The notes under the pieces are model-generated. The model was not told the origin of the DNA, searched no databases, and saw only the letters and a program-made list of their open reading frames with translations. Shown here piece after piece: positions 45,025 to 64,000 of a stretch of 64,000 bases of DNA. Within the stretch, counting starts at the first letter, position 1. Every line of letters starts with the position of its first letter. Made by a program: the position numbers and the translations under genes. The DNA comes from Asterias rubens (Eukaryota), in NCBI RefSeq assembly GCF_902459465.1, contig NW_022985708.1, positions 62,001-126,000 on the forward strand, given 5' to 3'.

Positions 45025-45446
45025 GTAAGTGCACATGTTTTAACCAGATTGATTTTCTTGTGTTTCAATTGTCTTGTTTTGTTTCCTCTCTTCACCTACA
45101 AATACTTCCCAAGTATCCAGCCCCCTCTCCCTTCCTCGATTATTCCCAACATGCTCACCCTCTCTTATCTTGCTTTACCTATCCCTTTTCATACTTCCCA
45201 ACAATACCACCTTTAGGTCAATGAAGTAGACTACTAGTTTCTCATCACAATTCTTTTTATTATTACCCAAATTTCATTATTTTTCCCAAAAAGTTGGAAA
45301 AATCTGACACAAACTGCTCCCATCTTAAGCACATAAAAAGGTCCAGACCAGTTGTACGGTTGGTATTTTTGCAGCTTCCAAGGAAAAGAAGGGAAGAACA
45401 ATACATCAAACCAGTTTCGAAAAAGCAGTTTGTGTGTGTGTGTGTG

Positions 45447-45954
45447 CGTTTGTATATGGTGTAAATCGAGGACACATACGTGAATACATACCCACCTACT
45501 GAGGGCAGTCGGCTCACCGAGGACTGTCCTCGGTAGGATATCCGTTTTAAATGCAAAAATCGATGAAATCTCATGTTTTCCTGCAAATCTCACGAGAAAA
45601 ATTGGGCGTCCTCGTTCAAGCGACACAGAACGTGTGGAGTGTTACCGTGTGTGAAATTCAGCACATGGTTGTGTGTTGGTCTACTACCCAACGTCCCCAC
45701 TAATGCGGCAGCACACATGTTTAGTCGAAACACAAGGTACCAGTCTAAATGCAGTACAACCGAGCACTTCACTGTTGTTGGGAACGAACAGCGACATCCT
45801 TACGCTTGGATTTCAAGACAAACAACGTAAGTGGCACATTTTTGACAGTCTTTAATTAAGAGAGCTATAGTTTATTTTACTTTCATAACGTTAAAAACCT
45901 AGGAATAGTACTCGAAGTAGTGCATGTGTCCTCGATTTACACCATATACAAACG
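45447..45954. repeat. 508-bp segment bounded by perfect 31-bp inverted repeats
   Basis: CGTTTGTATATGGTGTAAATCGAGGACACAT at 45447-45477 and its reverse complement at 45924-45954; no TSD seen. Confidence 0.7.
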
Positions 45955-47743
45955 CCGTGATTCACGCGGCATCAAATGTGGCCATCATCAAACATGGCGC
46001 CGGACATGACACAGCGTGTTGAGCATCAACTCTGTAACCAAATTAGAAATCTTACGGTTGCTGTAATAGTTTTGTTCATTTTGTTCATTTTTCTTACATT
46101 CTATACATTTTTGAGATCGTTCATGTAAGTTAACAAAGTCTATGAATAATTATTCACAACTTGCGACTCGGCTGACAGTGCTAGTGGCCGACAGTGTAAT
46201 AAACTTTCAAGTTTCATCAATGATGACATGACCTCAATAATACAATCATTCGTGGTCCCGGTGATGTATTTTGTTTAGCTGTGGTTTGAGGAGGGCTACA
46301 ATTTTTTTTTACTGGAGTAGGCCTACTTTGTTTGAGTGTGAGTGATCTTTTTTTGTAAGTTGCATTGAGTTGTTTTCCCAGGTAGCAAGCCAACGTTGGT
46401 CCAACGTTGGAAACTCGCAACTTGTTGGACGTTGGAAAAACTGGTTGGTCCAACGTTGCGGCAACGTCGGATTTCATTTGCTATAACGTTGGAATCTTTG
46501 GTTAGTTTCACGTGTTTCCAATGTTGGAAACTTGTTGGGAGTAAATGAGAAATATTTTGTTGAAGAAGAAATGGTCGGGGTGGGGGATGCTGCTGGAAAT
46601 TACGTCTACTGGATATATTTTGTTAAACCCAAGTACCATTTCCATTGTTAATTCATGTTTCTGATTGTGTGTAGTATGCTTGAACAATAAAAAAATACAT
46701 GTATCTCATAAACATTTGAAGGAAAAAATAACAATATTTTATTCAGGCAGTTTTTAAAATATACAGACACACTGGCGGATCTATAATTTTTTTGGGGGGC
46801 CGGCCTAAAAGTCAAAATTTCAGTAAAATAGTTAAACAGAGAAAACACGAAAAGAAAAACATTCACATAAAACTAACATGGTTAAGGCATTCCCCTTCCT
46901 TCTCTCCTCTCCCTTTTCTTTCCTTTTCCTACTGTTTTTTACAATTTCTTTTGCGGGGGGGGGGGGGTGGGGGAGCTTTGGTCTGTGGATGCAAGAGTTA
47001 CACCAAAAACAGACTTGTTCCCAATACGTATTGGGAGCACCGTGTTTGTATAGTATTGTTGTATTAGCACTTGCAAAGCAAACAGTGTAGAGACTGGAAG
47101 CCAGTTTATTCCCCATTCTAGGCTGGTTCCCACATCCAATGCTGCACATAAATGTCAAGTACAGTGCAGGGAACTAGTCTGGCTGTGGGCACATGTGTGC
47201 ATATACACATGGTCATACACACCACCACGTTGTTCATTCATCATAAGCACTCTGTTCCTTGACCTCGCCTCGTTATTTACCACAAAAATCTATCTGCTTT
47301 TGAGTGTGATTTGTTTCCACATTTTGACCCAGGTCGTCGTGCGTTATATTTATATGTTGCATTGGTTTCTTCAGTACAATTGTGGGTATGTATCAGGTCA
47401 TTATTATTTGTTCCATTGACTTGAAATTGCAGCTTTTTAGGCCACGTTTTTGATCAAAATGATGGATGGCTGTCACGAAAGTACTACTAGTACTACTACT
47501 ACTAGTACTATAGTGTCAGCGTTTTGCTTTCATTTTCAACATGGTCAAATGTAAATCAACGTGTAAAATTGGTAGCTGTTTGAAAATACTGACTTTATAT
47601 GAAGTTATATGGATGTTAGCCTTCAGCTGTCATAGGAATATTCACTGTCTTCATTCCTTACTATATAACCTCACATTATAGCTGAGCTAGATGGGTCTAC
47701 GACTTGTTGCATGTAGGGCAGGCCACCTTTGTAAAATTTCAGC

Positions 47744-49960
47744 ATGGCTCATCGACCTTTGTCATTGTGTGTGAAGTTCAAACCAACCTTCGTTTCAGCA
47801 CGCAATAGACAAGCCCGGACAAGAGTATTAAGATACCTTCAGTCAATTGAAACAGAGAGACCTAACTCCAATCATACAGCTCAGTCAGAGGTTGCTGGGG
47901 ATAACTGGCATTCTTTTGCAAATGGTACTGATGACATTTCAAATCGTGGTCCTAGTTCACACATGGATAGGCCTAGCACTACTAGTAGTCCAGAGCATTC
48001 ATCAGTCAGGGAAGAATCTGAACATTCCACAGCTGCTGACATTAAAAACGATATGTCTACGCCTAGTGATGATACTACTAGTACTAGTGATAGTGACGAA
48101 GATGATAGAGAACCTCATGAAATTGATTTTCAGGTGTACCCGCTTGATGAAACCGCCAGCAATTCAAGTTACAGTTCAAATGTCAGCGCTCACAAAGACA
48201 GGAATAATAATCAGTTAAAAGACAGTCTAGCTCAGTGGGCCATTGAATACAAAATTCCACAAGTTGCCTTGTCGGGTTTGCTATCCCTGCTTCAAGTTAA
48301 CCATCCAAATCTTCCAAAGGATGCTCGAACACTACTTCAAACAACTGTCTCTTACTCAACAAAGGTGATCGGTGGAGGGTCATATCATCATTTTGGACTA
48401 CAGACCTCAATAACATCTAAACTCAACTCTTATAGCGGGCCCCAGTATATGAACCAGTTGTCTTTGCAGATGAATATTGATGGGCTTCCATTATTCAAGA
48501 GCTCATCAGGTCAGTTCTGGCCAATATTGGGCATGATTGAGCAGTTACCGCAGAAGGAGCCCTTCATAATAGGGCTGTTCTATGGTAACTCTAAACCTCA
48601 GGTTACTGAATTTTTGGCAGATTTTGTTGAGGATATGCATGCAGTACAAGCCGCTGGAGGAATACGATTTAAGGATCGTTTGCTTCCTCTGGAGATATCC
48701 ACTATTATCTGTGACACCCCTGCCCGAGCGTTTGTGAAATGTGTGAAAGGTCACAGTGGCTATCATGGATGCGATAAATGCATTCAAGAAGGTGAATGGG
48801 ATGGACGCTTAGTCTTTCCTGAAACTGATTCTGCTCTCAGAACTGATAGGGACTTCAGTGACATGACTGATGATGGACACCACACAGGCACATCACCCTT
48901 TCATCTGTTAGGCCTTGGAATGATTTCGCAGTTTCCCGTAGACTACATGCACCTCGTTTGCCTAGGGGTAACAAGGAAGCTAATCTTGTTGTGGAAAAGT
49001 GGCCCACTGACATGTAGACTGAGTTCAAGAGAATTCCTTGGGATGTCAAACTCTTTGGTGGCTCTCAAGTCATGTATGCCAAGAGAATTTTCTCGCAAGC
49101 CACGCACACTTACAGAAGTTGACAGGTGGAAAGCGACGGAATTCCGGCAATTTCTTTTATACACTGGTCCTGTTATCCTTGCCCATGCTTTACCTAATCC
49201 AATGTATAAAAATTTCTTGCTGTTTTCAATGGGAATCCACATTCTGATCAGCCCATCTCTCTGTCATGCTATGTGCGATCTTGCCCACAAGCTTTTAGTT
49301 GCTTTTGTGCGGCATTTTGGCGACATGTATGGAAAGGATAAACTGGTGTACAATGTTCATGGACTGGTTCATCTTGCTAATGAGGTCAGATTGCATGGCA
49401 ATTTGGACAACATATCAGCATTCCCATTCGAAAATTTCTTGGGTCAGTTGAAAAAAATGGTTCGTTCTCCCAAGAACCCCCTTCAGCAGGTAATCAGAAG
49501 ATTGTCGGAGAATTGTTCAATCACGACACACAAGAATAGAGGCATCAACGGAGTGAAAAAACGGCATTCTGAGGGTCCTCTGCCTGTACACTTCGGGGCA
49601 TGTCATCAGTACAAAGCGGCTAACCTTCCTGTTGGTTATGTTTCTTCAGTGGAAGGTGATAACTGTGTGATGGTCAACCAGCAGATAAGCTTGGTTCGAA
49701 ACTTGCTGGTGAAGAACAATGTTATCTACATTGCTTTTCAACCATTTCAGCAGTGTCGGGATTTCTTTTCATATCCACTGAAATCATCACATGTTGGAAT
49801 ATTCGAAGTGGCCATGTTGAACGATGATCTTGAGGTTGTTCCGGCTCAGGCTATTTCATCTAAATATGTACTTCTTCCCAAAGTCAGTTGCAGGGTAAAT
49901 GACAGACCGGGTGATGTTAATGAAATTTACATTGCTGTACCACTTCTCCATACAGTATGA
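47744..49960 (+). CDS. EnSpm/CACTA DDE transposase (intact, 738 aa)
   Basis: NIDGLPLFKSS, ICDTPARAF, GHSGYHGCDKC, DYMHLVCLGV, WKATEFRQFLLY and AFPFEN. Confidence 0.93.
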   Translation: MAHRPLSLCVKFKPTFVSARNRQARTRVLRYLQSIETERPNSNHTAQSEVAGDNWHSFANGTDDISNRGPSSHMDRPSTTSSPEHSSVREESEHSTAADIKNDMSTPSDDTTSTSDSDEDDREPHEIDFQVYPLDETASNSSYSSNVSAHKDRNNNQLKDSLAQWAIEYKIPQVALSGLLSLLQVNHPNLPKDARTLLQTTVSYSTKVIGGGSYHHFGLQTSITSKLNSYSGPQYMNQLSLQMNIDGLPLFKSSSGQFWPILGMIEQLPQKEPFIIGLFYGNSKPQVTEFLADFVEDMHAVQAAGGIRFKDRLLPLEISTIICDTPARAFVKCVKGHSGYHGCDKCIQEGEWDGRLVFPETDSALRTDRDFSDMTDDGHHTGTSPFHLLGLGMISQFPVDYMHLVCLGVTRKLILLWKSGPLTCRLSSREFLGMSNSLVALKSCMPREFSRKPRTLTEVDRWKATEFRQFLLYTGPVILAHALPNPMYKNFLLFSMGIHILISPSLCHAMCDLAHKLLVAFVRHFGDMYGKDKLVYNVHGLVHLANEVRLHGNLDNISAFPFENFLGQLKKMVRSPKNPLQQVIRRLSENCSITTHKNRGINGVKKRHSEGPLPVHFGACHQYKAANLPVGYVSSVEGDNCVMVNQQISLVRNLLVKNNVIYIAFQPFQQCRDFFSYPLKSSHVGIFEVAMLNDDLEVVPAQAISSKYVLLPKVSCRVNDRPGDVNEIYIAVPLLHTV

Positions 49961-50043
49961 GAAATGACTACAAAATTAGTTTGCATGTCACATATTGTAT
50001 TTTTTAAATCAATGCAACATCAGGTGTATTTAAATGAATCTTT

Positions 50044-53000
50044 ATGCAGCAACTCACCATGGATCTGAAAACATATGTGATGGTCGAGTTCAAATCCAAG
50101 GCAGAGGTCGCTGTGGTCCACAAGAACTGGATAGTTGTAGGAGACCACAATACAAAATGCAAGTGGCCCCAAGTGTCACCAAGTGCAATTCGTCTTCACC
50201 TAATGGTAGTGGGAGAGATGAAGGCAGCAGCAGAATGGGACTGTCATGACATCGAAATCCTGTATCAGTCGGGTAAGTACATATAACTTCGGTGTTCTGT
50301 GTACATGAACACAAGAAGAGTTTTGTTGCATATGTTTCATATCCAGTTGTGGCATTTTTGAGAACAAATTCCATTATCCGTCTCAGGAATGATCGATATG
50401 TACGTGATGCAAATTATCTTTTCACATTTTGTGAAAAGAGAAGAACACTTTGTAAAAAACGCACTGTACATGTATATATCCACACATCTGTTTTTCTAGC
50501 AAGAAGCCATAAATATTCTGTTTATTTCGGACAGTTTCATGTTTCTGTATGATTTAAATAGTCACACCGCTAATGTCAAAATGTAATTAAAGACTAAAAA
50601 ATGAAGCTTACTGCTCTTATACATTTGTAGATTCCAGTTTACACATTAGCTCGTTATAAAGATGGAGCCAATACAGAGTAATAACATGCCCCATACATGG
50701 TATAAATACAAAATATACTTGCATCAATGTAAAATACTAAACTTTGTAGGTGGGGCAAATTTAATTGACAAAGCTTTCAAGAAGCAGTGTTGATACAGAA
50801 TTTCCCAAAATAAGAAAGCCTTGTAAGATATGTATTTACTTTGATGTGCTTGAAACTATTAGATGACTATCTGAAGTGCAAGGAGAAGATGAAACTTCTT
50901 CTTAAGGAGGATGTGTCCATAGAATGCCTGCAGACGCCCTCTGAAGGCTCAACAGCCGAGAACATCAGGAAGAGCAAACGAAGAAGGATGTAAGTAATTA
51001 GGGAGTTTGGTAAATGGTCTCACATACATGTACCTTGACAGGCCCATCCATATCCATGTGTTTACTTCTACTTGCCTCTGCAAATAACACATTTTTCCTC
51101 CAAGTATTCCTTTGATTTTGTTAAACAAGGAATATGTAGGTGGTAACATGTAGCTCTTAAATGTTTTTCAAAAGCAGTGCATGCTGTGAGATTATCATTG
51201 TGCTTAGGTAACACAGCAAACATTCAAATAGTTCAATTGGTTTTAATTTCCAGGCAAAGCCACCGATACAGCCCATTTGAGTCGGACAGTGATGAGGACA
51301 ATGGGCAAGACACACCACATCGCCCCAAAAAGGCAAGGATACATTTTCCACCCCTACCAAGGATCCAGTTCATCCATCCAGATGAACTGGAAAGTTGTCC
51401 ACCCTCACCATCTATCATGCCACCCTCGTCCACGAGGCCACCCTCAACAGCTGCCAGGCCACCATCATCTGGCAGACTGCCTTCATCATCTGTCAAGCCA
51501 ACCTTGCCATCTGCTGGTCTGTCTGCATCTGCCAGGCCATCTTCATCATCCACCAGGCCTCCATCTACATCTTCTAGGCAACCGACATCATCAATGAGGC
51601 CAACACCTTCCCCCAGATCACCCATAATATCACCCATGTCATTTCCCGCTATTGAGCCATCTACCTCCCACAGCAGTTCCTCTCGCTCCTCTAGCTCCTC
51701 TAGGACATCGCTGGCCCAATTAACTCAAGAGAAGGCTGCCAGCAAGGGAGTTTCAGGTATTGAGATGAATACCCTTCAATATCACGACCTCAGGTTTAGC
51801 ACTAAAAAGTTAACTTGACCTGAATTCAAACAGATCTTGAATAATCTTTTACCAACGTTCCAGCTGGTTTCTATTGTCTTCTGCACAACAATTGCAGTTG
51901 CACATAGACTAACAGTAATTTTGGGGAAATATTAATTTCTATCGGTAATTTTCACTCAAGTATCAGGCTTTGAAAACCTGTGATGTAAACTGGTCAGATG
52001 ACCTGTACATGTATCATAAACGAATACATTTTCATTTTTATTGCAGCAACCGAGGCTAAAATCCTTGAAACACTCGAGGCAATTTTGCTTCAAGTTGAGA
52101 GGAACTCAAGGATGCTCACCATGCTTGTTTCGAACAAGGAATCTTTGGAAGAGAGAGAGGATCTACCAGAAGAAGTCGACCTTCCCTTGCCCACGTACGA
52201 CTCTGCAAAGGATTTGGATCAGCGGCTTGCCGAAAACCAGACTCTTAAAAAATCATTGGTAGGTATATTTAATAGCACAACACAATTGTACTGCAATTTA
52301 TATGACATGTTCCATAGAATATATACGGCGTTTCATGTCATTTGGTCATATGATATTTTTAATTAATGCAAATACAATATGACAACATGCACAGCGTGGG
52401 AAGCGCTCAAGTGTAAAATGTGTTTGGAAATGTTTTCACTCCTTTGCAGTTGTTCTACTGTGGCACTTCTTTCATGGTAAATTTCTACATAGAAACAATT
52501 TTACACACATCACATTTGGCGGTGACTTATGTGACATGTCACTGTAAACAAGTTCATTTAAACTCCTGTGTTTAAGTCAGTGTATCATATACTATTGAGG
52601 ACAAACAATGCTGAGATGAAAACATCATGGTTCGCTTTCCTATGACCGGTTTTCATAGGAAAGCGAACTATGATGTTTTCATCTCAGCATTGTTTGTCCT
52701 CAATAGCTTGAGACATAATAGGACAGCACACATGTTAGTACTTGGCTTTGTTTAAATATAATACCACATTAATATTGACCATGAAAAGTAGAGTGTAACG
52801 CTTGAATGAATGGTGCTGATGAATTCACCCAAAGAATGTCCCTCTATAAGATATCTTCCTATGTATGTATGTTCTTGAAAATAGTAGATTCATATCATTG
52901 CCTTTTGGGGCAAAAATTGCTCAAAAAATTGTTTAATACATGTATTTTTTATCAATTACATATTCAGTCAACCCGTGTGCTCTTGTTCTGCTTAAATGAC

Positions 53001-54325
53001 TAACTGAAACATTAATTGTCATTTTTGTTTGGTTCAGATTAAGCGCCTCTCATTGATCGGCGGTGCCACCTTAGGAAAGGTGGTTCGAGGGATCATGGTT
53101 GATCTGGTGTCAACAGCCTTGGCCACACAGTGCAATTGGGTTGGGCAGAGAGGGCCAAAAAAGCCTTTTAGTGTTCTCAAGAACATTTTCTCTGTGATAA
53201 TCAGTAAGTAGGATTGTTTCTGTATGTACCTTAGGAGGGAGCCTTTTCAGTTTGCCAAAATGCATCTATTAACCCTTCTATGCTTGGGGTCACCTCTGGC
53301 CCAGGCCCTGCTAATCACAACCCCTCACAGCTGTGAAGCAATGTGAAGTGCAGAAATTTCCCTCAATAGGATTTTAGCGTGGAGTTTCTTTGTTAAGCCT
53401 GCATCCCTCAAAGGAACATACTTAATGCCTGCTGCACACGTGCAGCACGCATTGTATATGTTCCATTGAGGGATTCAGGCTTAACAAAGAATGGAATACA
53501 ATACACAGTAGCTACAATGGACGAAACAAAAGTGGTAATAATGGGGTGTTCATTGGGCAACTTCATGGCCAGCCCCTTTTGCTGCCCTTCACAAACACCC
53601 ATGCAGCTTTAAGGAGCAGGGTGGCTTTGCCCACAGGTTGTGTGTGAGGCATTAGCATGCATATACCAAAGCATCCAGAGGGAGAGTTAATGCACTTGTA
53701 AACAGTTGGATTTCAGCCATTTACCAAGCAAAAGAACAGATTCTTTCAAGTCATTTTGGTTTTGTTCTCATTTAAGTTACATGTATGAGATGATTTTTAT
53801 GTTGAGCTCATGCATGCATGTACCAACTCGCTGCTAACTCTGATGTTGCTGCGTGAATTGCACTGAAACTGAAATATACAAATTTCTTTGAATTAGTCAG
53901 AGAGAAGCATGAAGGTATATATACCTAACAATGTTTTGTTAACAAATATGAAACATACATTATAAGAAAACAAAAATATTGAACAAGTTTGTGGAGAATT
54001 TTCCAAGAAGCCTAGCTGTGTAAACGTTTGTAAGTCCCACAGGCAAAAGTGGCAATCCGACAGGGTGAACAACCCCAATTACCATTTTTGTAGGCTACTG
54101 TATTTATCTAATATTTTTACTTTTTCACCAGAATCAGTGCGACGAAACGGGGGGCATGAAAATGCCAGCCAAGAGGCAGTGCGGGATGCAGTGTCCAACC
54201 ATCTCCGCTACAGCTTTGATTTGGATGGACGTGGGTCCATCCGCAAGAAAAAATTCAAGGATGGAAGAACCACGGAGACCACTGCAGACCCTTCAAGTGA
54301 GCCGGACAGTGACACTGAGACATGA
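50044..54325 (+). CDS. Six-exon accessory gene (DUF4806/BEN-like), copy B
   Basis: Exons 50044-50272, 50863-50989, 51254-51756, 52047-52258, 53038-53203 and 54132-54325; phases 1, 2, 1, 0, 1 join into ~476 aa. Confidence 0.8.
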
Positions 54326-55812
54326 AGGAGGTGTGAAGGATATATTGGACAATTTTGGCTGTTTTTGCACTTTTAGGAAAAGCCATTCTTTTTCGTTTTT
54401 GCTTTTCTTTTGACTTGTAAAAAGGGCTTTGTGGTTTGCAGATGAGTGTCCCTAGTCGACTGGGGCAATTTACATTCAACCAGTCCCAAGCAATCTCCCT
54501 GAAGACCAGAATCCAATGTGTGTTATTGATTTACTGAAATTGTTCTTTGTTTCTTTATTTTATGAGAACAACCATTATGTAACATTTGACCATTTTCTGG
54601 TTTTTTTTTTATGTTGCCTCCGAATTGCTTATCAAAGTTGCCCTGTTGACATAGGCCTTTTGGGACCTAATTGTATAATAAAGAAAAAAAGGAGTGGAGA
54701 ACAAAATGTAGAATTACAGTTAATTGTTAAAAGAATGTTTGACTCTTAAGTGACTAAGAATAGGAACACAAATTATTGTTGTCATTTCAATCACTTCATT
54801 ACCTTCTCCATTTCAGAGACATTGGAGAATGAATAAGTGTATATTAAGTTGCATTTATCGTTTGTTAAACTCATACATGTACACTGCTTTTTCTTTTCTG
54901 CACTTTCCAGACGTCAATTTTGTTAACAGATATGACTGCTTGCTGATGTACAGAGTATGTTAAACCATCAAAACTGTTTGATTAGAACAACTGAAAACAC
55001 TTCATGAATGGATTATATTTGTGGAAGAAATAGGAATTCGGGCTACGCATTCAGACTTCCCTCTATGATTTGTTTTGCCCTTTAATAAACAATTGAACCT
55101 ATATAGGTGGCCATGTTTGTGACAATCAGTTGTCCACGCGTCTCTCCATATATGCACTGAGTATATACAATGAGTTCGCCAACTATCAAGCAGCCAGTGT
55201 CTTGCCTAGACTTGTTTTAACTCATACTGGGGTAATGCTGTTACATGTTTGAAATGAAACTAGGCCACTACGTTTGAAATTTTCAACGTTTCACTGTTTA
55301 TATCGTGCCTGCAAAATTTCTATTTCATTGTACATGTACATGCGTTTTTAAGAATAAAGTGATATTTGTCAGTATCGCAGTCATTTGTCACTTTCGTTGT
55401 TATGCTGTCGGATGAGTTAAAGCTCATTCCAAGTTTGTGGAAGTCACTTTATTAGTCATTTGTCTATTCATATGCCATGAAGCCTAAAATGGTCTGTTGG
55501 AAAGTTGCTGGAAATTTGTTGGAAGTGGGTGGAATCTGGTTGGATTAACATTGGAAACTTGTGGGATTTGTTGGGAATAATGACAAGTTTGGTTGGATAT
55601 TGTGGGAATAACGTAAATCCAACGTTGGAGCAACGTTGGATCCAGCGTCGCTGCAACGTTGTCTCAACATGCAAAATAACGTTGGTGCAACGTTGCCGGA
55701 CAACGCTGGTCCAACGTTGTCATCCGTATTTGACAACGTTGGTGCAACGTTGGACCAACGTTGGCTTGCTACCTGGGTTATTAGGTAGTAACGTAACATG
55801 AGTAACGGCACA

Positions 55813-56610: not shown

Positions 56611-57037
56611 ACGCCATGTACATTGTACCTTCAGATTGTCACCTTTTTTTCAGATAAAAACCCCAAATGTTATGCCTAGACTTTTCCCCCAGTTGTCATG
56701 GAAACGATGTGCGCGCTCGTTTCAGTGTAATTTTATAAACAAATCTGGGGGCAAATCACTAAATTTACACCGTCGGCACTATGATGTTTACTGATGCGCA
56801 TGTGTACATGAGCGCTGATCTGATTTGCTGAAACGGACGCATTGCTTGCATTATGGCAATTTGCCCCAAGATTTGTCCATAAAGATAGACCAAAACGAGC
56901 GCGCACGTTTTCGTAGTAATGTGCATACGTACTAATGTACTGAGGTATAGTGGTAACTGGGGAAAAATCTAGGCATAACATTCTGGGTTTTTATCCACAA
57001 AAAAAGTGACATCCTGAAGGTACATGTACATTGGCGT
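56611..57037. mobile_element. Foldback MITE
   Basis: Long imperfect inverted arms ACGCCATGTACATTGTACCTTCAG..ATGTTATGCCTAGA..CCCCAGTT. Confidence 0.7.
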
Positions 57038-57257
57038 ATACGGCCAAGAAGCCGAGGGAGTACAGCGTATTGGCACTACTTATGGGGCTAGAGGTTCGTG
57101 AGCTCAGGGGGGTCCAGGAAATTCTTTCAGACATGTCAGAAAGATAAATTGATAGAAATAAATAAATAAATAATCAACGCCATTCATAATCCTTAACTAG
57201 CTGCTTTCTTAAGTTTCATGATTTCCTACAATTTTGTGTTTCCTGCAGGCAGTCATC

Positions 57258-60200
57258 ATGATTCGCTCACGGTTGCGAAACAGGTTTAAAAGAAAAGTAA
57301 GTACACTGTAGATGCAGGATAATTTTTTTAGTCCACATTTTTGGGGATTTTCCCAGTGCATGCATTATATATAAACATTTGGGTTAATGGTGTCTTTCAA
57401 TTTTAGCCTTGTGTGAAACAGTATATTTTTTGCACTTTTTAATTTTGTATTATTTTAGATCCAGTACTATTGAGCTACTCTCTAAGATCTTTGGTCTATT
57501 CTGACTACCCCATTACAGTCTACCCGCAGGTCACTCGATATAATAAGTTCCCTTTGTGATTTATCTGCACGATTTGGTGTGATTTTTCATGCGTGACCTC
57601 GGTTTGAATATATAATTAGTCCAAAGGGCTTCTAAAATTCAGTCTTTTTCGGCCTTATCTGAAAAGTATTGACAGAAATAATGTAGAACTTTTTGTTGGG
57701 TCAGGGACCAGTCTAGTGTATGCAGTTAGTCTTGGTTCAAAGACCATGGTGTTTGCTCGGTACATGCACAATCAGTACCACCAACGTTTGGATTTATGTA
57801 TCCCATATACACTGTACACGTTTGTAATGAATAAACATAGAGGGCGCTGTGACTAGTGTTATTTTCCCACCGACATCTGGATCAGGAAACAAAATTACAA
57901 CACGCTCTCTATGTTCATTCTTTACAAATGTACAGTGTGCGGTGTACATATGAACGTTGGTTGTGTGTACACGCAAACACCATGGTCTTGGAACCAAGAC
58001 TAGTATGCAGTGTGCATGTGGGACTGACCACTCTATCGGGACTAAAAACTCTAATCGACCAGCAGACCTGAACCAATTGTTGTGTGAACTTGCTCGATCC
58101 AGCAGGATGCTGGGCGTGCGTCATTTGGGACAGTCACGGTACGTCATTATCAGGAAATTGTGCATCGCAAAATGTATTTGACGTATTGTCATTGTAGGCA
58201 AAATGTGCGTCACATTTAAGACACAGTAATGTAATATAAATCCAGCTTACATTTGACAAGTGACGCACGATTCCAGGGGGGTCCTATGATGCGTCATACA
58301 ATTTACATTAGTGCATTAGTCTGACGGTATTTATAAAGACTTGTTCTAACAGTTCATCCATCCAACATCTTGTCAGTCTGATTACTGGTCTGTAAATCAA
58401 TCATACCAAAAAAATTTGAACGGCCTGATTCTTTGACCCATAGCAGAGTCTTTCTCAAGAAAGATTCTGCTGGGGGCCAAAACTTCAGGCCGTCAATTTT
58501 TTGTGTGCATTTATACCACACATACTTTTGTTTGGTGAACAGTTTGTAACAGCTAATTTTATTTTCTCTATCGAACCAAGTCTGACCAAATGTTTTAAAT
58601 CGTTACTTATTCTTTTAATTTGTGGATTTAAAACAAATTGTCTTGCAGTTTCAAGAAGGAGATAATGTCAAGGCACTGTGGCCTACTGATGGTTCATGGC
58701 ATGGAGCAGTTGTTGTTGGTTACAGCCAAGGTAATTGTTTTAACATTTATTCAGTATGCTAGTTTATAAAGCAGTTACATTCTGTGAGTTCCAACATGCA
58801 CAAATTTGGTGCTCAGCCCAATGATATTATTGTTAACCAAAGCTGGAAGTTCAAAAAAATTAAAGAGGTTAGGGGTTGAATTTTACATCTTTATATGCCA
58901 CCCAGTGAGATACTTGTCATATATGAAGCAGAAGGTTTTACGCTTGACATTTGAATGTATTATTCCTTGACCTACATCATAAACCATGCAGTTTGGTTCC
59001 TTAAATTTGTATCTGTTGCAGGCCATTACTTTTTGTCAAGGCATGGCACCTTGGTTCAAAAAAAATACCACGCAATCTGCTATGCAAGTGATGTTGATGA
59101 ATGACGGAGATCAGGCAGATTGATGACAATGACATTGTTTAATTAATTTATGTGATTGACAAAACAAATGCCATAAACAGATGATATATGCATCGTATGC
59201 TGACGAGAATCTCATCAATGCATGTTGTGCCAGTTTGTCTTTGAAAGCAGTTGAACAAGCTGTAATTTCAGAAAATGTTTGTTTGCCCAATTACAAAGTT
59301 TGCAGTTCTATCTATCGTACAGTTCTATCAATCCGGTCATCATTTCCATTTTTAAAATGTTTCTCAAGAGAAGGTTTCTTTCATTAAACTGTATTATTTT
59401 GACAATTTTTTTCAGGGAGATATATTGTGAAGTACAATGACGGTCTGAAGAAGACACTCCATGAACACCAAGTGAGTAATGTTCACAAAGTTGTAGATAA
59501 TTTTAGCCTGAGATGGTCCAATTATAACACTGACAACATTGATAAAGATAGTAATACAGGGCTCGACCCTAACGCTAGCCTAGCGTACATTGTCTAGTAA
59601 AAACTGCTGCGAGCAAGTAAAAACCACTTCTCAACTTCCCGGCGGGCTACTTAAAAACATGTGCACGATTCTTGTTTTTTATATGTGACTAATGTGATTT
59701 TGTGTGTCAAGCATGTCAAGCTTCAAGGCCATGGGCCAGGCGTAATGCATAACACCAGGCATCCAACTCTTCAGAAAACTACAACAAACTTATATTTTCC
59801 TATCACTTGCATGGACCAGACTGAAGCTAGCAGCGTATTGGGCCCCTATAGTGTCTGGTTCCCGCCTCATCACCTTATACAAAAAGCAACAAAAACACTA
59901 CGGAGCCAGACTGTTAAAAACATAGTGTAGAAGGTGTGCTGTATGAGGAGAACTTGTGTCTGTTTCAGGACTGTGTAATGCTTTTGTTCATGTGTAAACT
60001 TTCGTGGAGCCAGACTCTAAGAATCCTGAACCTTTATTATTTTTCAACAAGCAATGTTTCATTCAGTGGGATTTTTTTTGTTCATCTAACGCAGATTTTT
60101 TTTTTCATGCAGCTTGATTGTTTGTTTTTTTGGAAGTTTTTTTTGTAACGGCGGATTTCTATTTTATGAAATGGGGAAAACCACGGAAGAGTTGCATGCC

Positions 60201-63200
60201 TGTAACACGCGGAGGGCATATTAACTAAGACTAGTAAAAGCTCAAGTTAGATTGTTCTTGTTTACACATTTTGTACCATTGAACTTGAATCTTATACTGT
60301 GTAGTAGAGGGGATGATAAGCAAGTTTGCTATACAAGTTCGTTGTTGTATAATTTCGTTTTTGAAATTGGTTTCAAACAGTTACGTGTTTCAGATGAGAG
60401 AGACTCCAGTAACCTAGAACAGCGCACTTCTCCGTCAGTTGAAGAAAGAGACTCCAGTAACCTAGAACAGCGCACTTCTCCGTCAGTTGAAGAAAGAGAC
60501 TCCAGTAACCTAGAACAGCGCACTTCTCCGTCAGTTGAAGAAAGAGATTCCAGTAACCTAGAACAGCGCACTTCTCCGTCAGTTGAAGAAAGAGACTCCA
60601 GTAACCCGGAACAGCGCACTTCTCCGTCAGTTGAAGAAAGAGACTCCAGCCACCTAGAACAGCGCACTTCTCCGTCAGTTGAAGAAAGAGACTCCAGTAA
60701 CCTAGAACAGCGCACTTCTCCGTCAGTTGAAGAAAGAGACACCAGCCACCTGGAACAGCGCTCTTCTCCGTCAGTTGAAGAAAGAGACTCCAGCCACCTA
60801 GAACAGCGCACTTCTCCGTCAGTTGAAGAAAGAGACACCAGTAACCTAGAACAGCGCACTTCTCCGTCAGTTGAAGAAAGAGACACCAGCCACCTGGAAC
60901 AGCGCACTTCTCCGTCAGTTGAAGAAAGAGACTCCAGCCACCTAGAACAGCGCACTTCTCCGTCAGTTGAAGAAAGAGACTCCAGTAACCTAGAACAGCG
61001 CACTTCTCCGTCAGTTGAAGAAAGAGACACCAGCCACCTGGAACAGCGCACTTCTCCGTCAGTTGAAGAAAGAGACTCCAGTAACCTAGAACAGCGCACT
61101 TCTCCGTCAGTTGAAGAAAGAGACTCCAGCCACCTAGAACAGCGCACTTCTCCGTCAGTTGAAGAAAGAGACTCCAGCCACCTAGAACAGCATGAGAGAC
61201 AGTCGAGTCTTCACCTGGTACGGAAGACCACTACTTCAATGAATCAACAACGGCTTCAGCAAGCTCAATCATCACAAGCTTTGAAGCTTCACAGTATACC
61301 AGTATGGGAAGAAAATGACAAGCTGCAGCTGATATCAATTCCTGGATTTTCTCTTGACCAAATGGATGAAGTTTCATCATCAGTGGCAGAACAGTCTGAT
61401 AGTAGCTATGTTCCTGAATCAGAGTCGGATTCTGGAGAATCTATTGAAATTCCTCTTGCAGGGCTTGATCAGTTGCAGAAAGAAATGAGGGAGGCAGTCA
61501 CAGCAGATAACACAGAGGAATCAGAAGAACAATGTCAGCTGAGTAGTAGTGAAGTATCTTCAACCCTTTCGTTCTTGGTTTCTGAGATTAAAGTGGCGCA
61601 AACTACAAATGATGGAAAATCTAGAAACTGGGACAAGAAACAGTACTGTTACTTTTGTGGGCTTCCTCAAGCAAAATTATTCAGACATATCGAGTCTGTA
61701 CACAAAGAGGAGCCAGATGTTACATTCCTGCTTAATCACCCACATGGTGCAGCAAGAAAAAAGCTTCTTGTGAAAATCAGAAACTTGGGAAATCACAAAC
61801 ACAACTGCAATGTTCTCAGAGACGGGAAGGGCATGCTTGTTGTTGCATATCGGCCCTGCCATAGTAAAGCAAAGGCAAGTGACTATGGCCCATGTCCAAG
61901 TTGTCTTGCCTACTTTGTACGTAGAGAATTATGGAGACACACCCCCAAATGTCCATTGAGAAAGCCCTCAAAGAAGTCAGCAGATGGAAAGCCAACTTAC
62001 AGCCGGATATCCAGACAAAGTGACCTTCTAAAACCACCTGTTAAAGGTGTCTCATCACACTTAAACTTAATCATCCAGTCAATGAAGAAAGACGCTGTGT
62101 CCCTGGTAGTTAAGACTGATAAACTCATACTTGAACTTGCAAAAAGGGAATTCATGAAGGTGGGCCATGACGTTGACCAGTACAACTACCTGAGGACAAA
62201 ACTGAGGGAGATGGGCAGACTGCTGCTCCAACTACGACAAAACACAAAAAGGCCAAATGCATCACTTGAGTCCTTCATCAATCCCAGGTGCCTTACCGAC
62301 ATTGTGTCAGCTGTCCATGATCTTGCAGGATTTGACGAAGAAAGACATGATTACAAGGTTCCTTCACTGGCCCTCAAAATAGGGCACACATTCAATAAGT
62401 GTGCGGTTATTGTGAAAAGCCTTGCATTGGAATCTGAAGATAAAGACAAGGGAGCAAGAGCAGATGATTTCAAAGAACTTTGTGAAAGTAACTGGGAAGT
62501 GAGAGTCTCTACTCATGCCCACAGAACTTTAAGTGAGGCAAAACGCAACAACCCCACTACCTTGCCAACAAATGCTGACATCGTTAGAATGACCAAGTAC
62601 CTAAAAGATGTCGGGGCTCAACAAGTGAATTGTCTCAATGATGGCAAAGAAAATCCTCGAGATGCATGGAATCTGCTGAATGAGACAACACTCTGTCAAG
62701 CGATATTATTTAATAGGAGAAGACAAGGTGAGGTCTCAAAAATGAAACTCTCGGACTACACCAAGAAACATCGAGCAAAACCAGATGGTATGTGTATTCT
62801 CAGCAAGCTTGAGCAAAGTCTGTGTAAGATGTTTGAGATAGTTGAAGTTGTAGGTAAGCGAGGGAGAACAGTTCCTTTGTTACTGACTCCGGAGATGTCC
62901 GAGCAATTAAATTTGCTAATTGAGAATCGGCATGCTGTAGGGGTGGCGAGTGACAATAACTTTTTGTTTGGTCGTTCAAGCTACAGCAGTGAGGGACATA
63001 TCAGAGGATCCGATTGCCTGCGTAAACATGCAAGACTAAGTGGCGCTACTAATCCCAACAACCTGAGGTCAACAAAACTGAGGAAACACATAGCAACGGC
63101 TTCACAAATGTTGGCGTTATCTGAGAACCAGTTGGAGCTGTTGGCTTCGTTTATGGGCCACGATCTCCGAATACATAGGGAGTATTATCGAGTTCCGGAC

Positions 63201-64000
63201 ACTGTGCTGAGAGTGGCTAAATTATCAAAGTTGTTTCTAGCACTGGATAAAGGAACATTGCCATCACAAGAGGGGAAAACTCTGGACAACATTGAATTTG
63301 AGGATGACACTGAAGGTAATTAAAAATATTAGAGTATTTGCCACTTTCATCTGTTTCTGCTACATCTACTTATCTAATGTTGGTGCTCTTTATTGTATTG
63401 CCCATTATGCTACTTTAGTCCTTGTGATATTTCCCCCTGCTTTTGCCAATAGTTTTCATGTTACTTCCACCTCACCTCACTACCACTCCAACACCCTCGT
63501 CACTCTTGCAATTTACCTAGTCTTCTCATCATCACCAAACCATATTCAACCCTGCCCTGAACCCTATCAGTCCTAAGCCAATGTACCAAAAATTTAAAAT
63601 ACAGCATACTGACTACTGTTCATCAACCATCTCCACACCATCTTCCCAGCCTTCCCCTCTTTCAATGTACCAAGGTTTTTTTGAAAAGTAGCTTATGTGA
63701 CTTTTGACTTACCTGTGCCTTTTTGGGATTGGTTTTTATAATTTTATGCAGAGTCAGAAGCAGAGTCAGATGGAGAAGAGTCATCAAGGGAAGACAATGA
63801 AGATGAAGCAAAGCAGTCTTCAAGATCATCATCAGCTAGTGGTAACTTTGCTTGAATACTTTGCATTTCTTCTTGACTTTAAGAGATTTTCATTTCCGCA
63901 TAAGTTTAATTAAACTCTGAGTTGACAAGTTTTAACCACAACTATTGGTTTGTAGATGCTGTTTTGGATATTTTAATTGAGGAACCCCAACACCTTGCAT
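57258..64000 (+). CDS. Spliced gene: Tudor domain, 16-aa repeats and Crypton-like tyrosine recombinase; continues past the window end
   Basis: Exons 57258-57296, 58649-58730, 59416-59471, 60381-63315, 63752-63841 and on; phases 0, 1, 0, 1 are compatible. Tudor-like FQEGDNVKALWPTDGSWHGAVVVGYSQGRYIVKYNDG; YR motifs LFNRRRQGEV, GKRGR, STKLRKH, FMGHD and HREYY. Confidence 0.75.
57727..58002. mobile_element. Mutator-like MITE, 276 bp (intronic)
   Basis: TIR TAGTCTTGGTTC(A/C)AAGACCATGGTGTTTGC; perfect 9-bp TSD GTATGCAGT (57718-57726, 58003-58011). Confidence 0.88.
59756..60202. mobile_element. hAT-like MITE with 6-bp TSD (intronic)
   Basis: CAGGCATCCAACTCTTC ... GAAGAGTTGCATGCCTG, flanked by TAACAC on both sides. 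Confidence 0.7.
60402..61190 (+). repeat. Coding 48-bp minisatellite, 16.4 copies (DSSNLEQRTSPSVEER)
   Basis: Unit GACTCCAGTAACCTAGAACAGCGCACTTCTCCGTCAGTTGAAGAAAGA; 61170-60402 = 768 = 16 x 48. Confidence 0.95.

What the first reader, a model, noticed from the sequence alone, without database searches (positions are those of the whole stretch)
57258..64000. Tudor domain spliced to a Crypton-like tyrosine recombinase
Three small exons absent from the ORF track build a Tudor-like fold with aromatic-cage-type residues (W, W, Y, Y) and splice in phase to a 2.9-kb exon holding the repeats, a Cys/His region and a YR domain with its R, K, R, H and Y catalytic positions. The H of HxxR is replaced. 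A methyl-lysine or methyl-arginine reader on a recombinase would parallel chromodomain integrases, giving chromatin-guided integration or piRNA-pathway interaction. The frame remains open despite intronic MITEs, so the gene is either active or domesticated. I do not recall this fusion being described.
Basis: partly seen in the sequence, partly recalled or inferred. Interest (0 to 1): 0.75.

Follow-up and report, generated by a model that had tools for sequence, protein, structure and literature searches.

The report
Tudor-tipped tyrosine-recombinase jumping gene
This sea-star gene is a copy of a little-known jumping gene whose DNA cutting-and-joining enzyme carries a small Tudor module, of the kind cells use to read chromatin marks; a limpet and a worm have the same pairing, and I found no paper describing it.

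Summary
The window is Asterias rubens. RNA contigs from three studies show the joint 57296/58649 and one shows 58730/59416. The joint 59471/60381 was not seen in reads but is supported by homology.

The gene is larger than the finding. It has a 5' exon at about 45701-45826 and further exons from 63752 that run off the window.

Exons 2 and 3 plus the first three codons of exon 4 encode a true Tudor barrel. Its aromatic cage is incomplete (W, H, Y, G), like that of the lamin-B receptor. Exon 4 encodes 17 repeats of 16 residues, two zinc fingers and a two-domain tyrosine recombinase with R, K, R, H and Y. The His of HxxR is an invariant Thr across the family.

The same Tudor-repeats-recombinase protein exists in a limpet, as one intronless ORF inside a 7-kb unit present at two or more loci, and in Capitella, with the same two Tudor intron positions. 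Relatives carry SET, BRCT or FHA modules instead.

An 11-nt site motif in inverted arms next to (TG)n is conserved across all three phyla and flanks the Asterias 5' exon.

Best reading: a transposon copy, Crypton-like only loosely. This scan had already noted a SET-recombinase sister element on other DNA of this genome.

The parts
45431..45955 (.). 5' cis module of the element. (TG)8 is followed by a 32-nt perfect inverted-repeat pair (arms 45446-45477 and 45924-45955). Five CGAGGAC cores lie within 462 bp, including the palindrome CGAGGAC-T-GTCCTCG at 45518-45532.
   Evidence: 45428-45539 aligns colinearly with Patella L004 8931-9041 and Capitella L002 11302-11404. The 11 nt ATCGAGGACAC are invariant in 7 sites from three phyla.
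45701..45826 (+). Exon 0, the 5' exon, lying between the inverted arms. Its donor is GTAAGT at 45827. An in-frame ATG at 45749 follows three in-frame stops. The true 5' end is unknown.
   Evidence: Loose 93-nt end of the X1 contig maps to 45797-45826 and upstream. The X4 contig carries 126 nt upstream of exon 1. Translation.
57249..57296 (+). Exon 1. Acceptor AG at 57247-48. ATG at 57258 gives the basic leader MIRSRLRNRFKRK. Phase 0.
   Evidence: Joint 57296->58649 in X1, X4 and X7.
58649..58730 (+). Exon 2, the first half of the Tudor domain (FQEGDNVKALWPTDGSWHGAVVVGYSQ plus one base). Ends in phase 1.
   Evidence: Same intron place and phase as Capitella.
59416..59471 (+). Exon 3, the second half of the Tudor domain ((G)RYIVKYNDGLKKTLHEHQ). 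Ends in phase 0 right after HQ.
   Evidence: Joint to exon 2 in X4. Same intron place and phase as Capitella.
60381..63315 (+). Exon 4, 978 codons plus one base, with no stop. It holds Tudor strand 5 (LRV, 60381-60389), the repeats, the zinc fingers and the recombinase.
   Evidence: 100% identical to XP_033646694.1 from 61239 onward.
60393..61220 (+). Tandem array of about 17 copies of a 48-nt (16-residue) acidic, Ser-rich unit (EERDSSNLEQRTSPSV). It links the Tudor to the enzyme.
   Evidence: Transcribed: repeat contigs in X1 and X4 and depth over the array in X7. Patella and Capitella have unrelated repeats at the same place.
61647..61952 (+). Two zinc-binding motifs: CxxC..H....H (61647-61703) and CxxC..H...C (61893-61952).
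   Evidence: Seven of the eight ligands are invariant in the 45 sequences and the eighth, the second His of the first finger, is nearly so. Weak profile hits to zinc fingers in the PDB. High pLDDT.
62007..63266 (+). Tyrosine recombinase, core-binding plus catalytic domains. Arg I 62721-23, Lys 62856-58, Thr in place of His II 63072-74, Arg II 63081-83, His III 63159-61, Tyr 63186-88.
63752..63841 (+). Exon 5, an acidic, Ser-rich stretch. The last 69 residues, a conserved W-rich C-terminal domain, are encoded beyond the window end.
   Evidence: The same C-terminal domain is present in Patella, Capitella, Lineus and L001.

Best explanation
Window positions from about 45431 to beyond 64000 are one copy of a tyrosine-recombinase DNA transposon. 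It belongs to a large, mostly unannotated metazoan family.

Its single spliced gene makes one protein. In order, the protein has a short basic leader, a canonical single Tudor barrel, a fast-evolving repeat linker, two zinc fingers, a Cre/Xer-type two-domain recombinase with R-K-(T)xxR-H-Y, and a conserved C-terminal domain.

Shown: two of the three joints between the Tudor exons and the big exon, both folds, conservation of the fusion in three phyla, mobility of the Tudor branch in a limpet, and a conserved site motif at the 5' end.

Inferred: the enzyme binds the ATCGAGGACAC sites and the CGAGGAC/GTCCTCG palindrome, then excises and integrates the element through a circular form. The Tudor tethers the enzyme to a chromatin or protein partner and so biases where or when it acts, as chromodomains do for Gypsy integrases. 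In sister branches a SET, BRCT or FHA module takes the same place.
For: Splicing:
- Joints 57296/58649 (three studies) and 58730/59416 (one run), plus an upstream exon.
- All splice sites are canonical and in phase.

Tudor:
- The four-row profile hits LBR (6.8e-6), SMN (1.4e-5), SPF30 and PHF20 in the PDB.
- The AF2 model of the limpet segment superposes on TDRD3 at 1.0 A, TM 0.94.

One protein:
- Patella P0121 is a single 3423-nt ORF.
- Both Capitella Tudor introns sit at the same codon and phase as in Asterias.
- Strand 5 of the barrel is on exon 4.

Recombinase:
- Foldseek top hits are XerH, XerA, Cre, XerD and lambda Int over about 400 columns.
- The catalytic residues have canonical spacing and are invariant in 45 sequences.

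Transposon:
- Two Patella chromosomes share a 7-kb unit at 97% identity with unrelated flanks, and there is a third fragment.
- SET-type relatives occupy 12 or more loci in S. purpuratus and 8 or more in A. japonicus at 90% identity or more.
- Capitella has tandem copies.

Cis sites:
- Motif clusters lie next to the gene in all five loci, against 0.2-0.5 expected for the 9-nt core (found in four of the five) and a spaced 7-nt array in L001.
Against: - Only one such protein is on record for A. rubens, and no second copy or empty site was seen.
- The copy has sat long enough to collect a 9.4-kb transposon and several MITEs in its introns. That also fits a fixed, domesticated gene.
- The third joint was not seen in reads. 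NCBI's model starts after the repeats.
- The Tudor cage lacks two of its four aromatic residues.
- No recombination product, circle or binding was observed.
Confidence: 0.7

Rival explanations
1. Domesticated host gene. A once-mobile copy has been fixed and is now kept by the sea star for a function of its own, for example chromatin-linked DNA rearrangement or only DNA and chromatin binding.
For: - A single annotated protein in A. rubens.
- A multi-exon structure with long introns full of younger insertions.
- Spliced transcripts in three independent studies.
- An intact 978-codon exon with no stop or frameshift in four runs over 61162-63199.
Against: - All catalytic residues and the family's cis-site module, with perfect 32-nt arms, are retained.
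- Close relatives are demonstrably multi-copy elsewhere.
- It lies on a 220-kb record crowded with transposons, and a SET-type sister is noted about 41 kb before the window.
- No orthology or selection test was possible. The five SNPs seen are 3 non-synonymous and 2 synonymous.
Confidence: 0.2
2. Two transcription units. Exons 0-3 make a small stand-alone Tudor protein or a non-coding RNA, and the recombinase exon is expressed separately.
For: - Joint 59471/60381 is absent from the contig tables.
- One contig reads from exon 2 on into intron 2.
- The RefSeq protein begins at 61239.
- The openness of the repeat array alone is weak evidence, because the opposite strand is open there too.
Against: - The barrel's fifth strand and the conserved HQ-[LVI]-[RK] motif straddle the joint.
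- The limpet has it all in one ORF.
- Capitella has the same order of parts and the same introns.
- RNA contigs cover the repeats but not 60200-60380.
Confidence: 0.05
3. The Tudor does not steer integration. Instead it engages host silencing or RNA machinery, for example by binding methyl-arginine on PIWI or Sm-type proteins, to escape or exploit the piRNA pathway.
For: Sequence and fold neighbours include the methyl-arginine readers SMN, SPF30 and TDRD3.
Against: - It is a single Tudor of about 55 residues with only 13-42 residues ahead of it. PIWI binders use the extended Tudor of about 180 residues (established knowledge).
- The best sequence match is the LBR Tudor, a chromatin-associated domain.
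- Sister branches carry SET, BRCT and FHA, which are chromatin and DNA-damage modules.
- The cage is incomplete.
Confidence: 0.1

Closest known systems
Crypton DNA transposons (Goodwin 2003; Kojima & Jurka 2011, PMC3212892)
   Same: A DNA element whose only enzyme is a tyrosine recombinase, with no reverse transcriptase and no long terminal inverted repeats at the outer ends. It is found in echinoderms, molluscs and fish, and can be spliced.
   Different: - No DUF3504 match in over 120 members, whereas CryptonA recombinases match it at 8e-12 or better.
- Has two zinc fingers, a conserved C-terminal domain and an N-terminal chromatin module, whereas animal Cryptons are described as lacking a C-terminal domain.
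- The His of HxxR is an invariant Thr.
CryptonV (Repbase Reports 2012, cnidarians; cited in PMC8869645)
   Same: Crypton-class elements reported to insert specifically in microsatellites. Here a (TG)n run abuts the conserved 5' arm in Asterias, Patella and Capitella.
   Different: No CryptonV sequence or description was available to compare. Membership is a lead only.
Chromoviruses and Gypsy-10_Ec32 (PMC12477816)
   Same: A transposon-encoded DNA-joining enzyme fused to a Royal-family reader domain, a chromodomain or a Tudor, that is thought to guide integration.
   Different: Those are LTR retrotransposons with DDE integrases and a C-terminal reader. This is a tyrosine recombinase with an N-terminal reader. 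The 2025 paper calls its alga element the first reported transposon carrying a Tudor domain.
Single Tudor domains of LBR, SMN, SPF30, TDRD3 and PHF20
   Same: A five-strand barrel of about 55 residues. Profile E-values run from 7e-6 to 3e-4 (LBR, SMN, SPF30, PHF20; TDRD3 only 0.03). Foldseek rmsd is about 1 A.
   Different: Cage positions are W, H, Y, G in Asterias and W, Y, Y, D in Patella, instead of four aromatics. This is nearest to LBR (VKY-x-DG).
SET-recombinase element of the same genome (scan note s1-150128) and the SET, BRCT and FHA relatives
   Same: The same zinc-finger, recombinase and C-terminal core (39-55% identity). The N-terminal slot is filled by a chromatin or DNA-damage module.
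   Different: A different module. In the tree, the Asterias and Patella Tudor types form one starred clade, and the SET types are scattered.
Crypton-derived host genes (KCTD1, KIAA1958, ZMYM2-4, QRICH1)
   Same: Recombinase-derived domains fused to other modules in spliced host genes.
   Different: Those have lost most of the catalytic tetrad and are DUF3504. Here the catalytic set is kept.

Membership tests
Tyrosine recombinase superfamily (Cre/Xer/lambda Int) | Two-domain fold: helical core-binding domain plus catalytic domain | tested here: met
   AF2 model has pLDDT 86. Foldseek PDB top 20 hits are all tyrosine recombinases, with 370-436 aligned columns. BFVD gives phage integrases and VLF-1.
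Tyrosine recombinase superfamily (Cre/Xer/lambda Int) | Arg I, beta-hairpin Lys, Arg II, His/Trp III and Tyr nucleophile with canonical spacing | tested here: met
   R379, K424, R499, H525 and Y534 (numbering of P0001:117-700) are invariant or nearly so in 45 sequences. The spacings K-to-R 75, R-to-H 26 and H-to-Y 9 compare with XerD's 75, 23 and 9 (XerD numbers from established knowledge).
Tyrosine recombinase superfamily (Cre/Xer/lambda Int) | His II of the HxxR motif | tested here: not met
   Thr (T496) in all 45 aligned members, so this is a family trait and not decay.
Tudor domain (single, SMN/LBR type) | Sequence-profile similarity to solved Tudor domains | tested here: met
   LBR 6.8e-6, SMN 1.4e-5, SPF30 2.4e-5, PHF20 2e-4. 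Weak Pfam LBR_tudor, Agenet and SGF29 hits on Patella.
Tudor domain (single, SMN/LBR type) | Five-stranded beta barrel | tested here: met
   Shown on the Patella homologue: pLDDT 82, five strands, TDRD3 TM 0.94. Carried to Asterias by alignment of exons 2 and 3. The joined Asterias sequence was not folded.
Tudor domain (single, SMN/LBR type) | Four-residue aromatic cage for methyl-Lys or methyl-Arg | tested here: not met
   By alignment to SMN (W102, Y109, Y127, Y130 from established knowledge), Asterias has W, H, Y, G. No binding test was done.
Crypton (CryptonA/I sensu Kojima & Jurka 2011) | Tyrosine recombinase as the only enzyme; no RT or RNase H | tested here: met
   The 7-kb Patella unit has one ORF of its own. 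No RT domain was found in any scanned protein.
Crypton (CryptonA/I sensu Kojima & Jurka 2011) | Recombinase matches DUF3504 (PF12012) | tested here: not met
   No PF12012 hit for the window ORF, 8 long relatives or 45 aligned members, and none in the precomputed Pfam column for 120 hits.
Crypton (CryptonA/I sensu Kojima & Jurka 2011) | No C-terminal domain and no terminal repeats in animal Cryptons | tested here: not met
   A conserved C-terminal domain of about 60 residues is present. Inverted-repeat site modules lie at the 5' side.
Crypton (CryptonA/I sensu Kojima & Jurka 2011) | Several copies at unrelated loci | tested here: inconclusive
   Met for the family in Patella, S. purpuratus and A. 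japonicus. Not shown for the Asterias copy.
CryptonV (Repbase) | Sequence similarity to CryptonV consensus; microsatellite-specific insertion | not testable with these tools
   Repbase is not at hand. (TG)n abuts the 5' arm in three phyla, which is a hint only.
DIRS/Ngaro YR retrotransposons | Reverse transcriptase and RNase H ORFs beside the recombinase | tested here: not met
   None in the Patella unit or the window gene.

The most novel reading that the evidence does not exclude
A metazoan-wide superfamily of tyrosine-recombinase transposons uses a swappable N-terminal chromatin module (Tudor, SET, BRCT or FHA) to choose or mark its integration sites. It recognises a recombination site kept nearly unchanged since before echinoderms, molluscs and annelids split. 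In Asterias the two perfect inverted arms enclose the element's own promoter exon, so the enzyme could flip that 446-bp segment and switch its own expression on and off.
Probability: 0.15. Interest if true: 0.85.

Novelty: new variant of a known kind. Interest (0 to 1): 0.66.

Why it matters
Reader domains fused to integrases are the classic way retrotransposons pick safe chromatin. Here the same solution appears on a tyrosine recombinase, an enzyme class prized for programmable genome engineering, and in several interchangeable versions. A natural Tudor-, SET-, BRCT- or FHA-tipped recombinase family would make chromatin-guided site-specific recombination directly testable, because it comes with an identifiable 11-nt site and intact copies in several animals. 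It would also add a sizeable, largely undescribed branch to eukaryotic transposon classification. For genome annotation, the RefSeq model of this gene (790 residues) omits the Tudor and the repeats.

Tried and rejected
- Pfam on the big ORF gave only a spurious Fibrinogen_BP hit on the repeats.
- phmmer of the recombinase half and the full 45-row profile against PDB sequences gave nothing, or only zinc fingers. The fold search was needed.
- A word search with the Patella Tudor region found only itself.
- A Tudor HMM on the N-terminal extensions of the other hits found only Patella and Capitella.
- No Tudor exon was found within 10 kb upstream of the 65% homologue on L001.
- Ten other long N-terminal extensions had no clear Pfam domain.
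- The C-terminal domain has no Pfam match. My 'Myb/SANT-like' impression is untested.
- The transposase-like ORFs next to the gene in the window and in L001 are unrelated to each other.
- BFVD gave only generic integrases.
- P0006 is not on record for contig look-up, so the isoform P0121 was used instead.
Exons were used one by one by reference, and natural full-length homologues stood in.
- I did not run the large representative search. Its top 150 would be the family itself and carry no names.
Full report
**Organism and locus.** The big ORF 60252-63323 is 100% identical to XP_033646694.1, 'uncharacterized protein LOC117305914' of Asterias rubens, which lies on a 220-kb record. That RefSeq protein has 790 residues. 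It begins at an internal Met (window 61239), after the repeats. It continues past the ORF's stop through a splice at 63315/63752 and then off the window.

Read directly from the sequence:
- Exon 1 has its ATG at 57258 and a GTAAGT donor after 57296.
- Exon 2 is 58649-58730 and ends in phase 1.
- Exon 3 is 59416-59471 and ends in phase 0.
- Exon 4 opens at 60381 and is open for 978 codons.

Contigs from three runs of three studies behave as RNA, because they carry spliced joints. A fourth run covers the introns and looks like DNA.
- The joint 57296->58649 is in all three RNA runs.
- The joint 58730->59416 is in one run.
- The third joint was not listed. The spliced contig stops exactly at 59471, an unspliced contig crosses that donor, and the repeat array is not assembled. 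The RNA runs have no depth over 60200-60399, while the repeats and everything from 61162 are covered.
- One contig reads from exon 2 into intron 2, so some molecules are incompletely spliced.

**The gene is larger than the finding.** A 93-nt loose end upstream of 57249 maps to 45734-45826. This is a 5' exon with a GTAAGT donor, 11.4 kb upstream. It carries an in-frame ATG at 45749, preceded by stops and two out-of-frame ATGs. The start codon is therefore either 45749 (29 residues longer, weak context) or 57258. Most of that intron is a nested 9.4-kb transposon with perfect 33-nt inverted ends.

**Tudor.** Each was used by reference, alongside natural homologues.
- Patella caerulea (P0006/P0121) and Capitella teleta (P0014) have a homologous N-terminal segment, followed by repeats and the same recombinase.
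- A profile of those two segments plus the two window exons hits solved Tudor domains: LBR 6.8e-6, SMN 1.4e-5, SPF30 and PHF20.
- The AF2 model of the Patella segment is a five-strand barrel that superposes on TDRD3, PHF20 and SMN at about 1 A.
- By the HMMER alignment to SMN, the canonical cage positions in Asterias are W, H, Y and G. Patella has W, Y, Y, D. This is the LBR-like pattern (VKY-x-DG), so the cage is incomplete.
- The fifth strand (HQ|LRV) is encoded by the first codons of exon 4. The barrel therefore cannot be completed without the joint at 60381.

**One protein.** In Patella the 1140-residue protein is a single uninterrupted ORF (L003 10001-13423). In Capitella the Tudor is split by two introns. 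One is in phase 1, at the 23rd codon after the GD motif. The other is in phase 0, directly after HQ. Asterias has exactly the same positions and phases. This outweighs the missing read evidence for the third joint.

**Recombinase.** Sequence searches are nearly blind to it. Pfam Phage_integrase scores below threshold in 6 of 45 members, and the PDB sequence search found nothing. The AF2 model (pLDDT 86) has XerH, XerA, Cre, XerD and lambda integrase as top matches across both domains. R379, K424, R499, H525 and Y534 are invariant or nearly so, with canonical spacing. The His of HxxR is Thr in all 45 sequences, so it is a family trait. Two zinc-binding motifs precede the enzyme, and seven of their eight ligands are invariant.

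**The family.**
- Relatives occur in echinoderms, molluscs, annelids, nemerteans and many teleosts.
- The N-terminal slot holds SET, tandem BRCT, FHA or Tudor.
- SET-type members are multi-copy: 12 or more loci in S. purpuratus and 8 or more in A. japonicus, at 90% identity or more.
- In a quick maximum-likelihood tree of the core, Asterias sits with two unnamed sequences inside a starred clade that also holds the Patella Tudor protein. Capitella lies outside this clade and the SET types are scattered.
- The Patella Tudor element is mobile or at least duplicated. Two chromosomes share a unit of about 7 kb at 97% identity with unrelated flanks. One copy has a 1.3-kb internal deletion, and a third fragment lies nearby.
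- Capitella has tandem copies 8.6 kb apart.

**Conserved cis sites.**
- Exon 0 lies between two perfect 32-nt inverted arms (45446-45477 and 45924-45955), preceded by (TG)8.
- The arms contain ATCGAGGACAC. The same 11 nt are invariant in seven aligned sites from Asterias, Patella and Capitella.
- The 9-nt core occurs 2, 5, 6 and 15 times in the window, L002, L003 and L004, against 0.2-0.5 expected.
- Five of the window's seven CGAGGAC heptamers fall within 462 bp.
- A palindrome CGAGGAC(N0-1)GTCCTC lies about 50-80 nt inside the arm in Asterias and Patella and near the matching cluster in Capitella.
- Window 45428-45539 aligns colinearly with the Patella and Capitella modules.
- This looks like a recombinase-binding and crossover site. 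It places the element's 5' end at about 45431, so the whole transcription unit lies inside the element.
- Without the nested insertions the window holds roughly 8.5 kb of the element, of the same order as the 7-kb Patella and 8.6-kb Capitella units.

**Transposon copy or domesticated gene.** The family is mobile elsewhere, and this copy keeps an intact ORF, the catalytic set and the site module. On the other side, only one such protein is recorded for A. rubens, and the copy has collected younger insertions. The five SNPs seen across runs (3 non-synonymous, 2 synonymous) say nothing either way. I put transposon copy at about 0.7 and domesticated gene at about 0.2.

**Comparison with what is known.** Animal Cryptons match DUF3504 and are described as lacking a C-terminal domain and terminal repeats (PMC3212892). 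This family fails all three tests, so it is Crypton-like only in being a recombinase-only DNA element. CryptonV, a Repbase group reported to insert in microsatellites (PMC8869645), is a candidate name that I could not test. No paper in the library joins a Tudor to a tyrosine recombinase. A 2025 paper calls a brown-alga Gypsy element the first reported transposon with a Tudor domain (PMC12477816). UniProt already labels the Patella and Capitella proteins 'Tudor domain-containing', so the data are public but undescribed. This scan had already noted a SET-recombinase element about 41 kb before this window (s1-150128). I saw SET-type relatives in other echinoderms but did not examine that locus.

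Noticed in passing
window 46377-55777: A 9.4-kb DNA transposon nested in intron 0. It has perfect 33-nt terminal inverted repeats, subterminal CAACGTTGG repeats and a 738-residue ORF (47744-49960) with a weak DUF4218 match.
   Followed up: partly
window 57727-58002 and 56624-57024: MITE-like inverted-repeat elements in intron 1 and just upstream of exon 1. The region around the first reaches depths in the thousands in the DNA-like run, so it is highly repeated.
   Followed up: partly
window 45703 and 45717: Two out-of-frame upstream ATGs in exon 0 open short uORFs that end in exon 1, ahead of the in-frame ATG at 45749.
   Followed up: no
L003 5709-8288: In Patella, an 859-residue ORF with a retroviral-integrase-like motif runs into the 5' edge of the shared unit. 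That copy therefore seems to sit in or against an LTR retrotransposon. The other copy (L004) carries the (TG)n arm about 380 bp further upstream, so L003 may be 5'-truncated.
   Followed up: partly
L001 15841-16699: A tandem array with a 70-bp period, each unit containing GTCCTCG, about 2.6 kb downstream of the 65% homologue's last exon. It may be that element's 3' site region.
   Followed up: no
L001 4904-7402 (-): An 832-residue transposase-like ORF upstream of the homologue. It is unrelated to the ORF nested in the window's intron.
   Followed up: partly
L002 7884-18149: The Capitella gene model P0014 is a chimera of the tail of one tandem copy and the whole of the next. The copies are about 96% identical and 8.6 kb apart.
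   Followed up: partly
window 62721: All four runs read C where the window has A, in the first base of the catalytic Arg I codon. The change is synonymous (AGA to CGA).
   Followed up: yes
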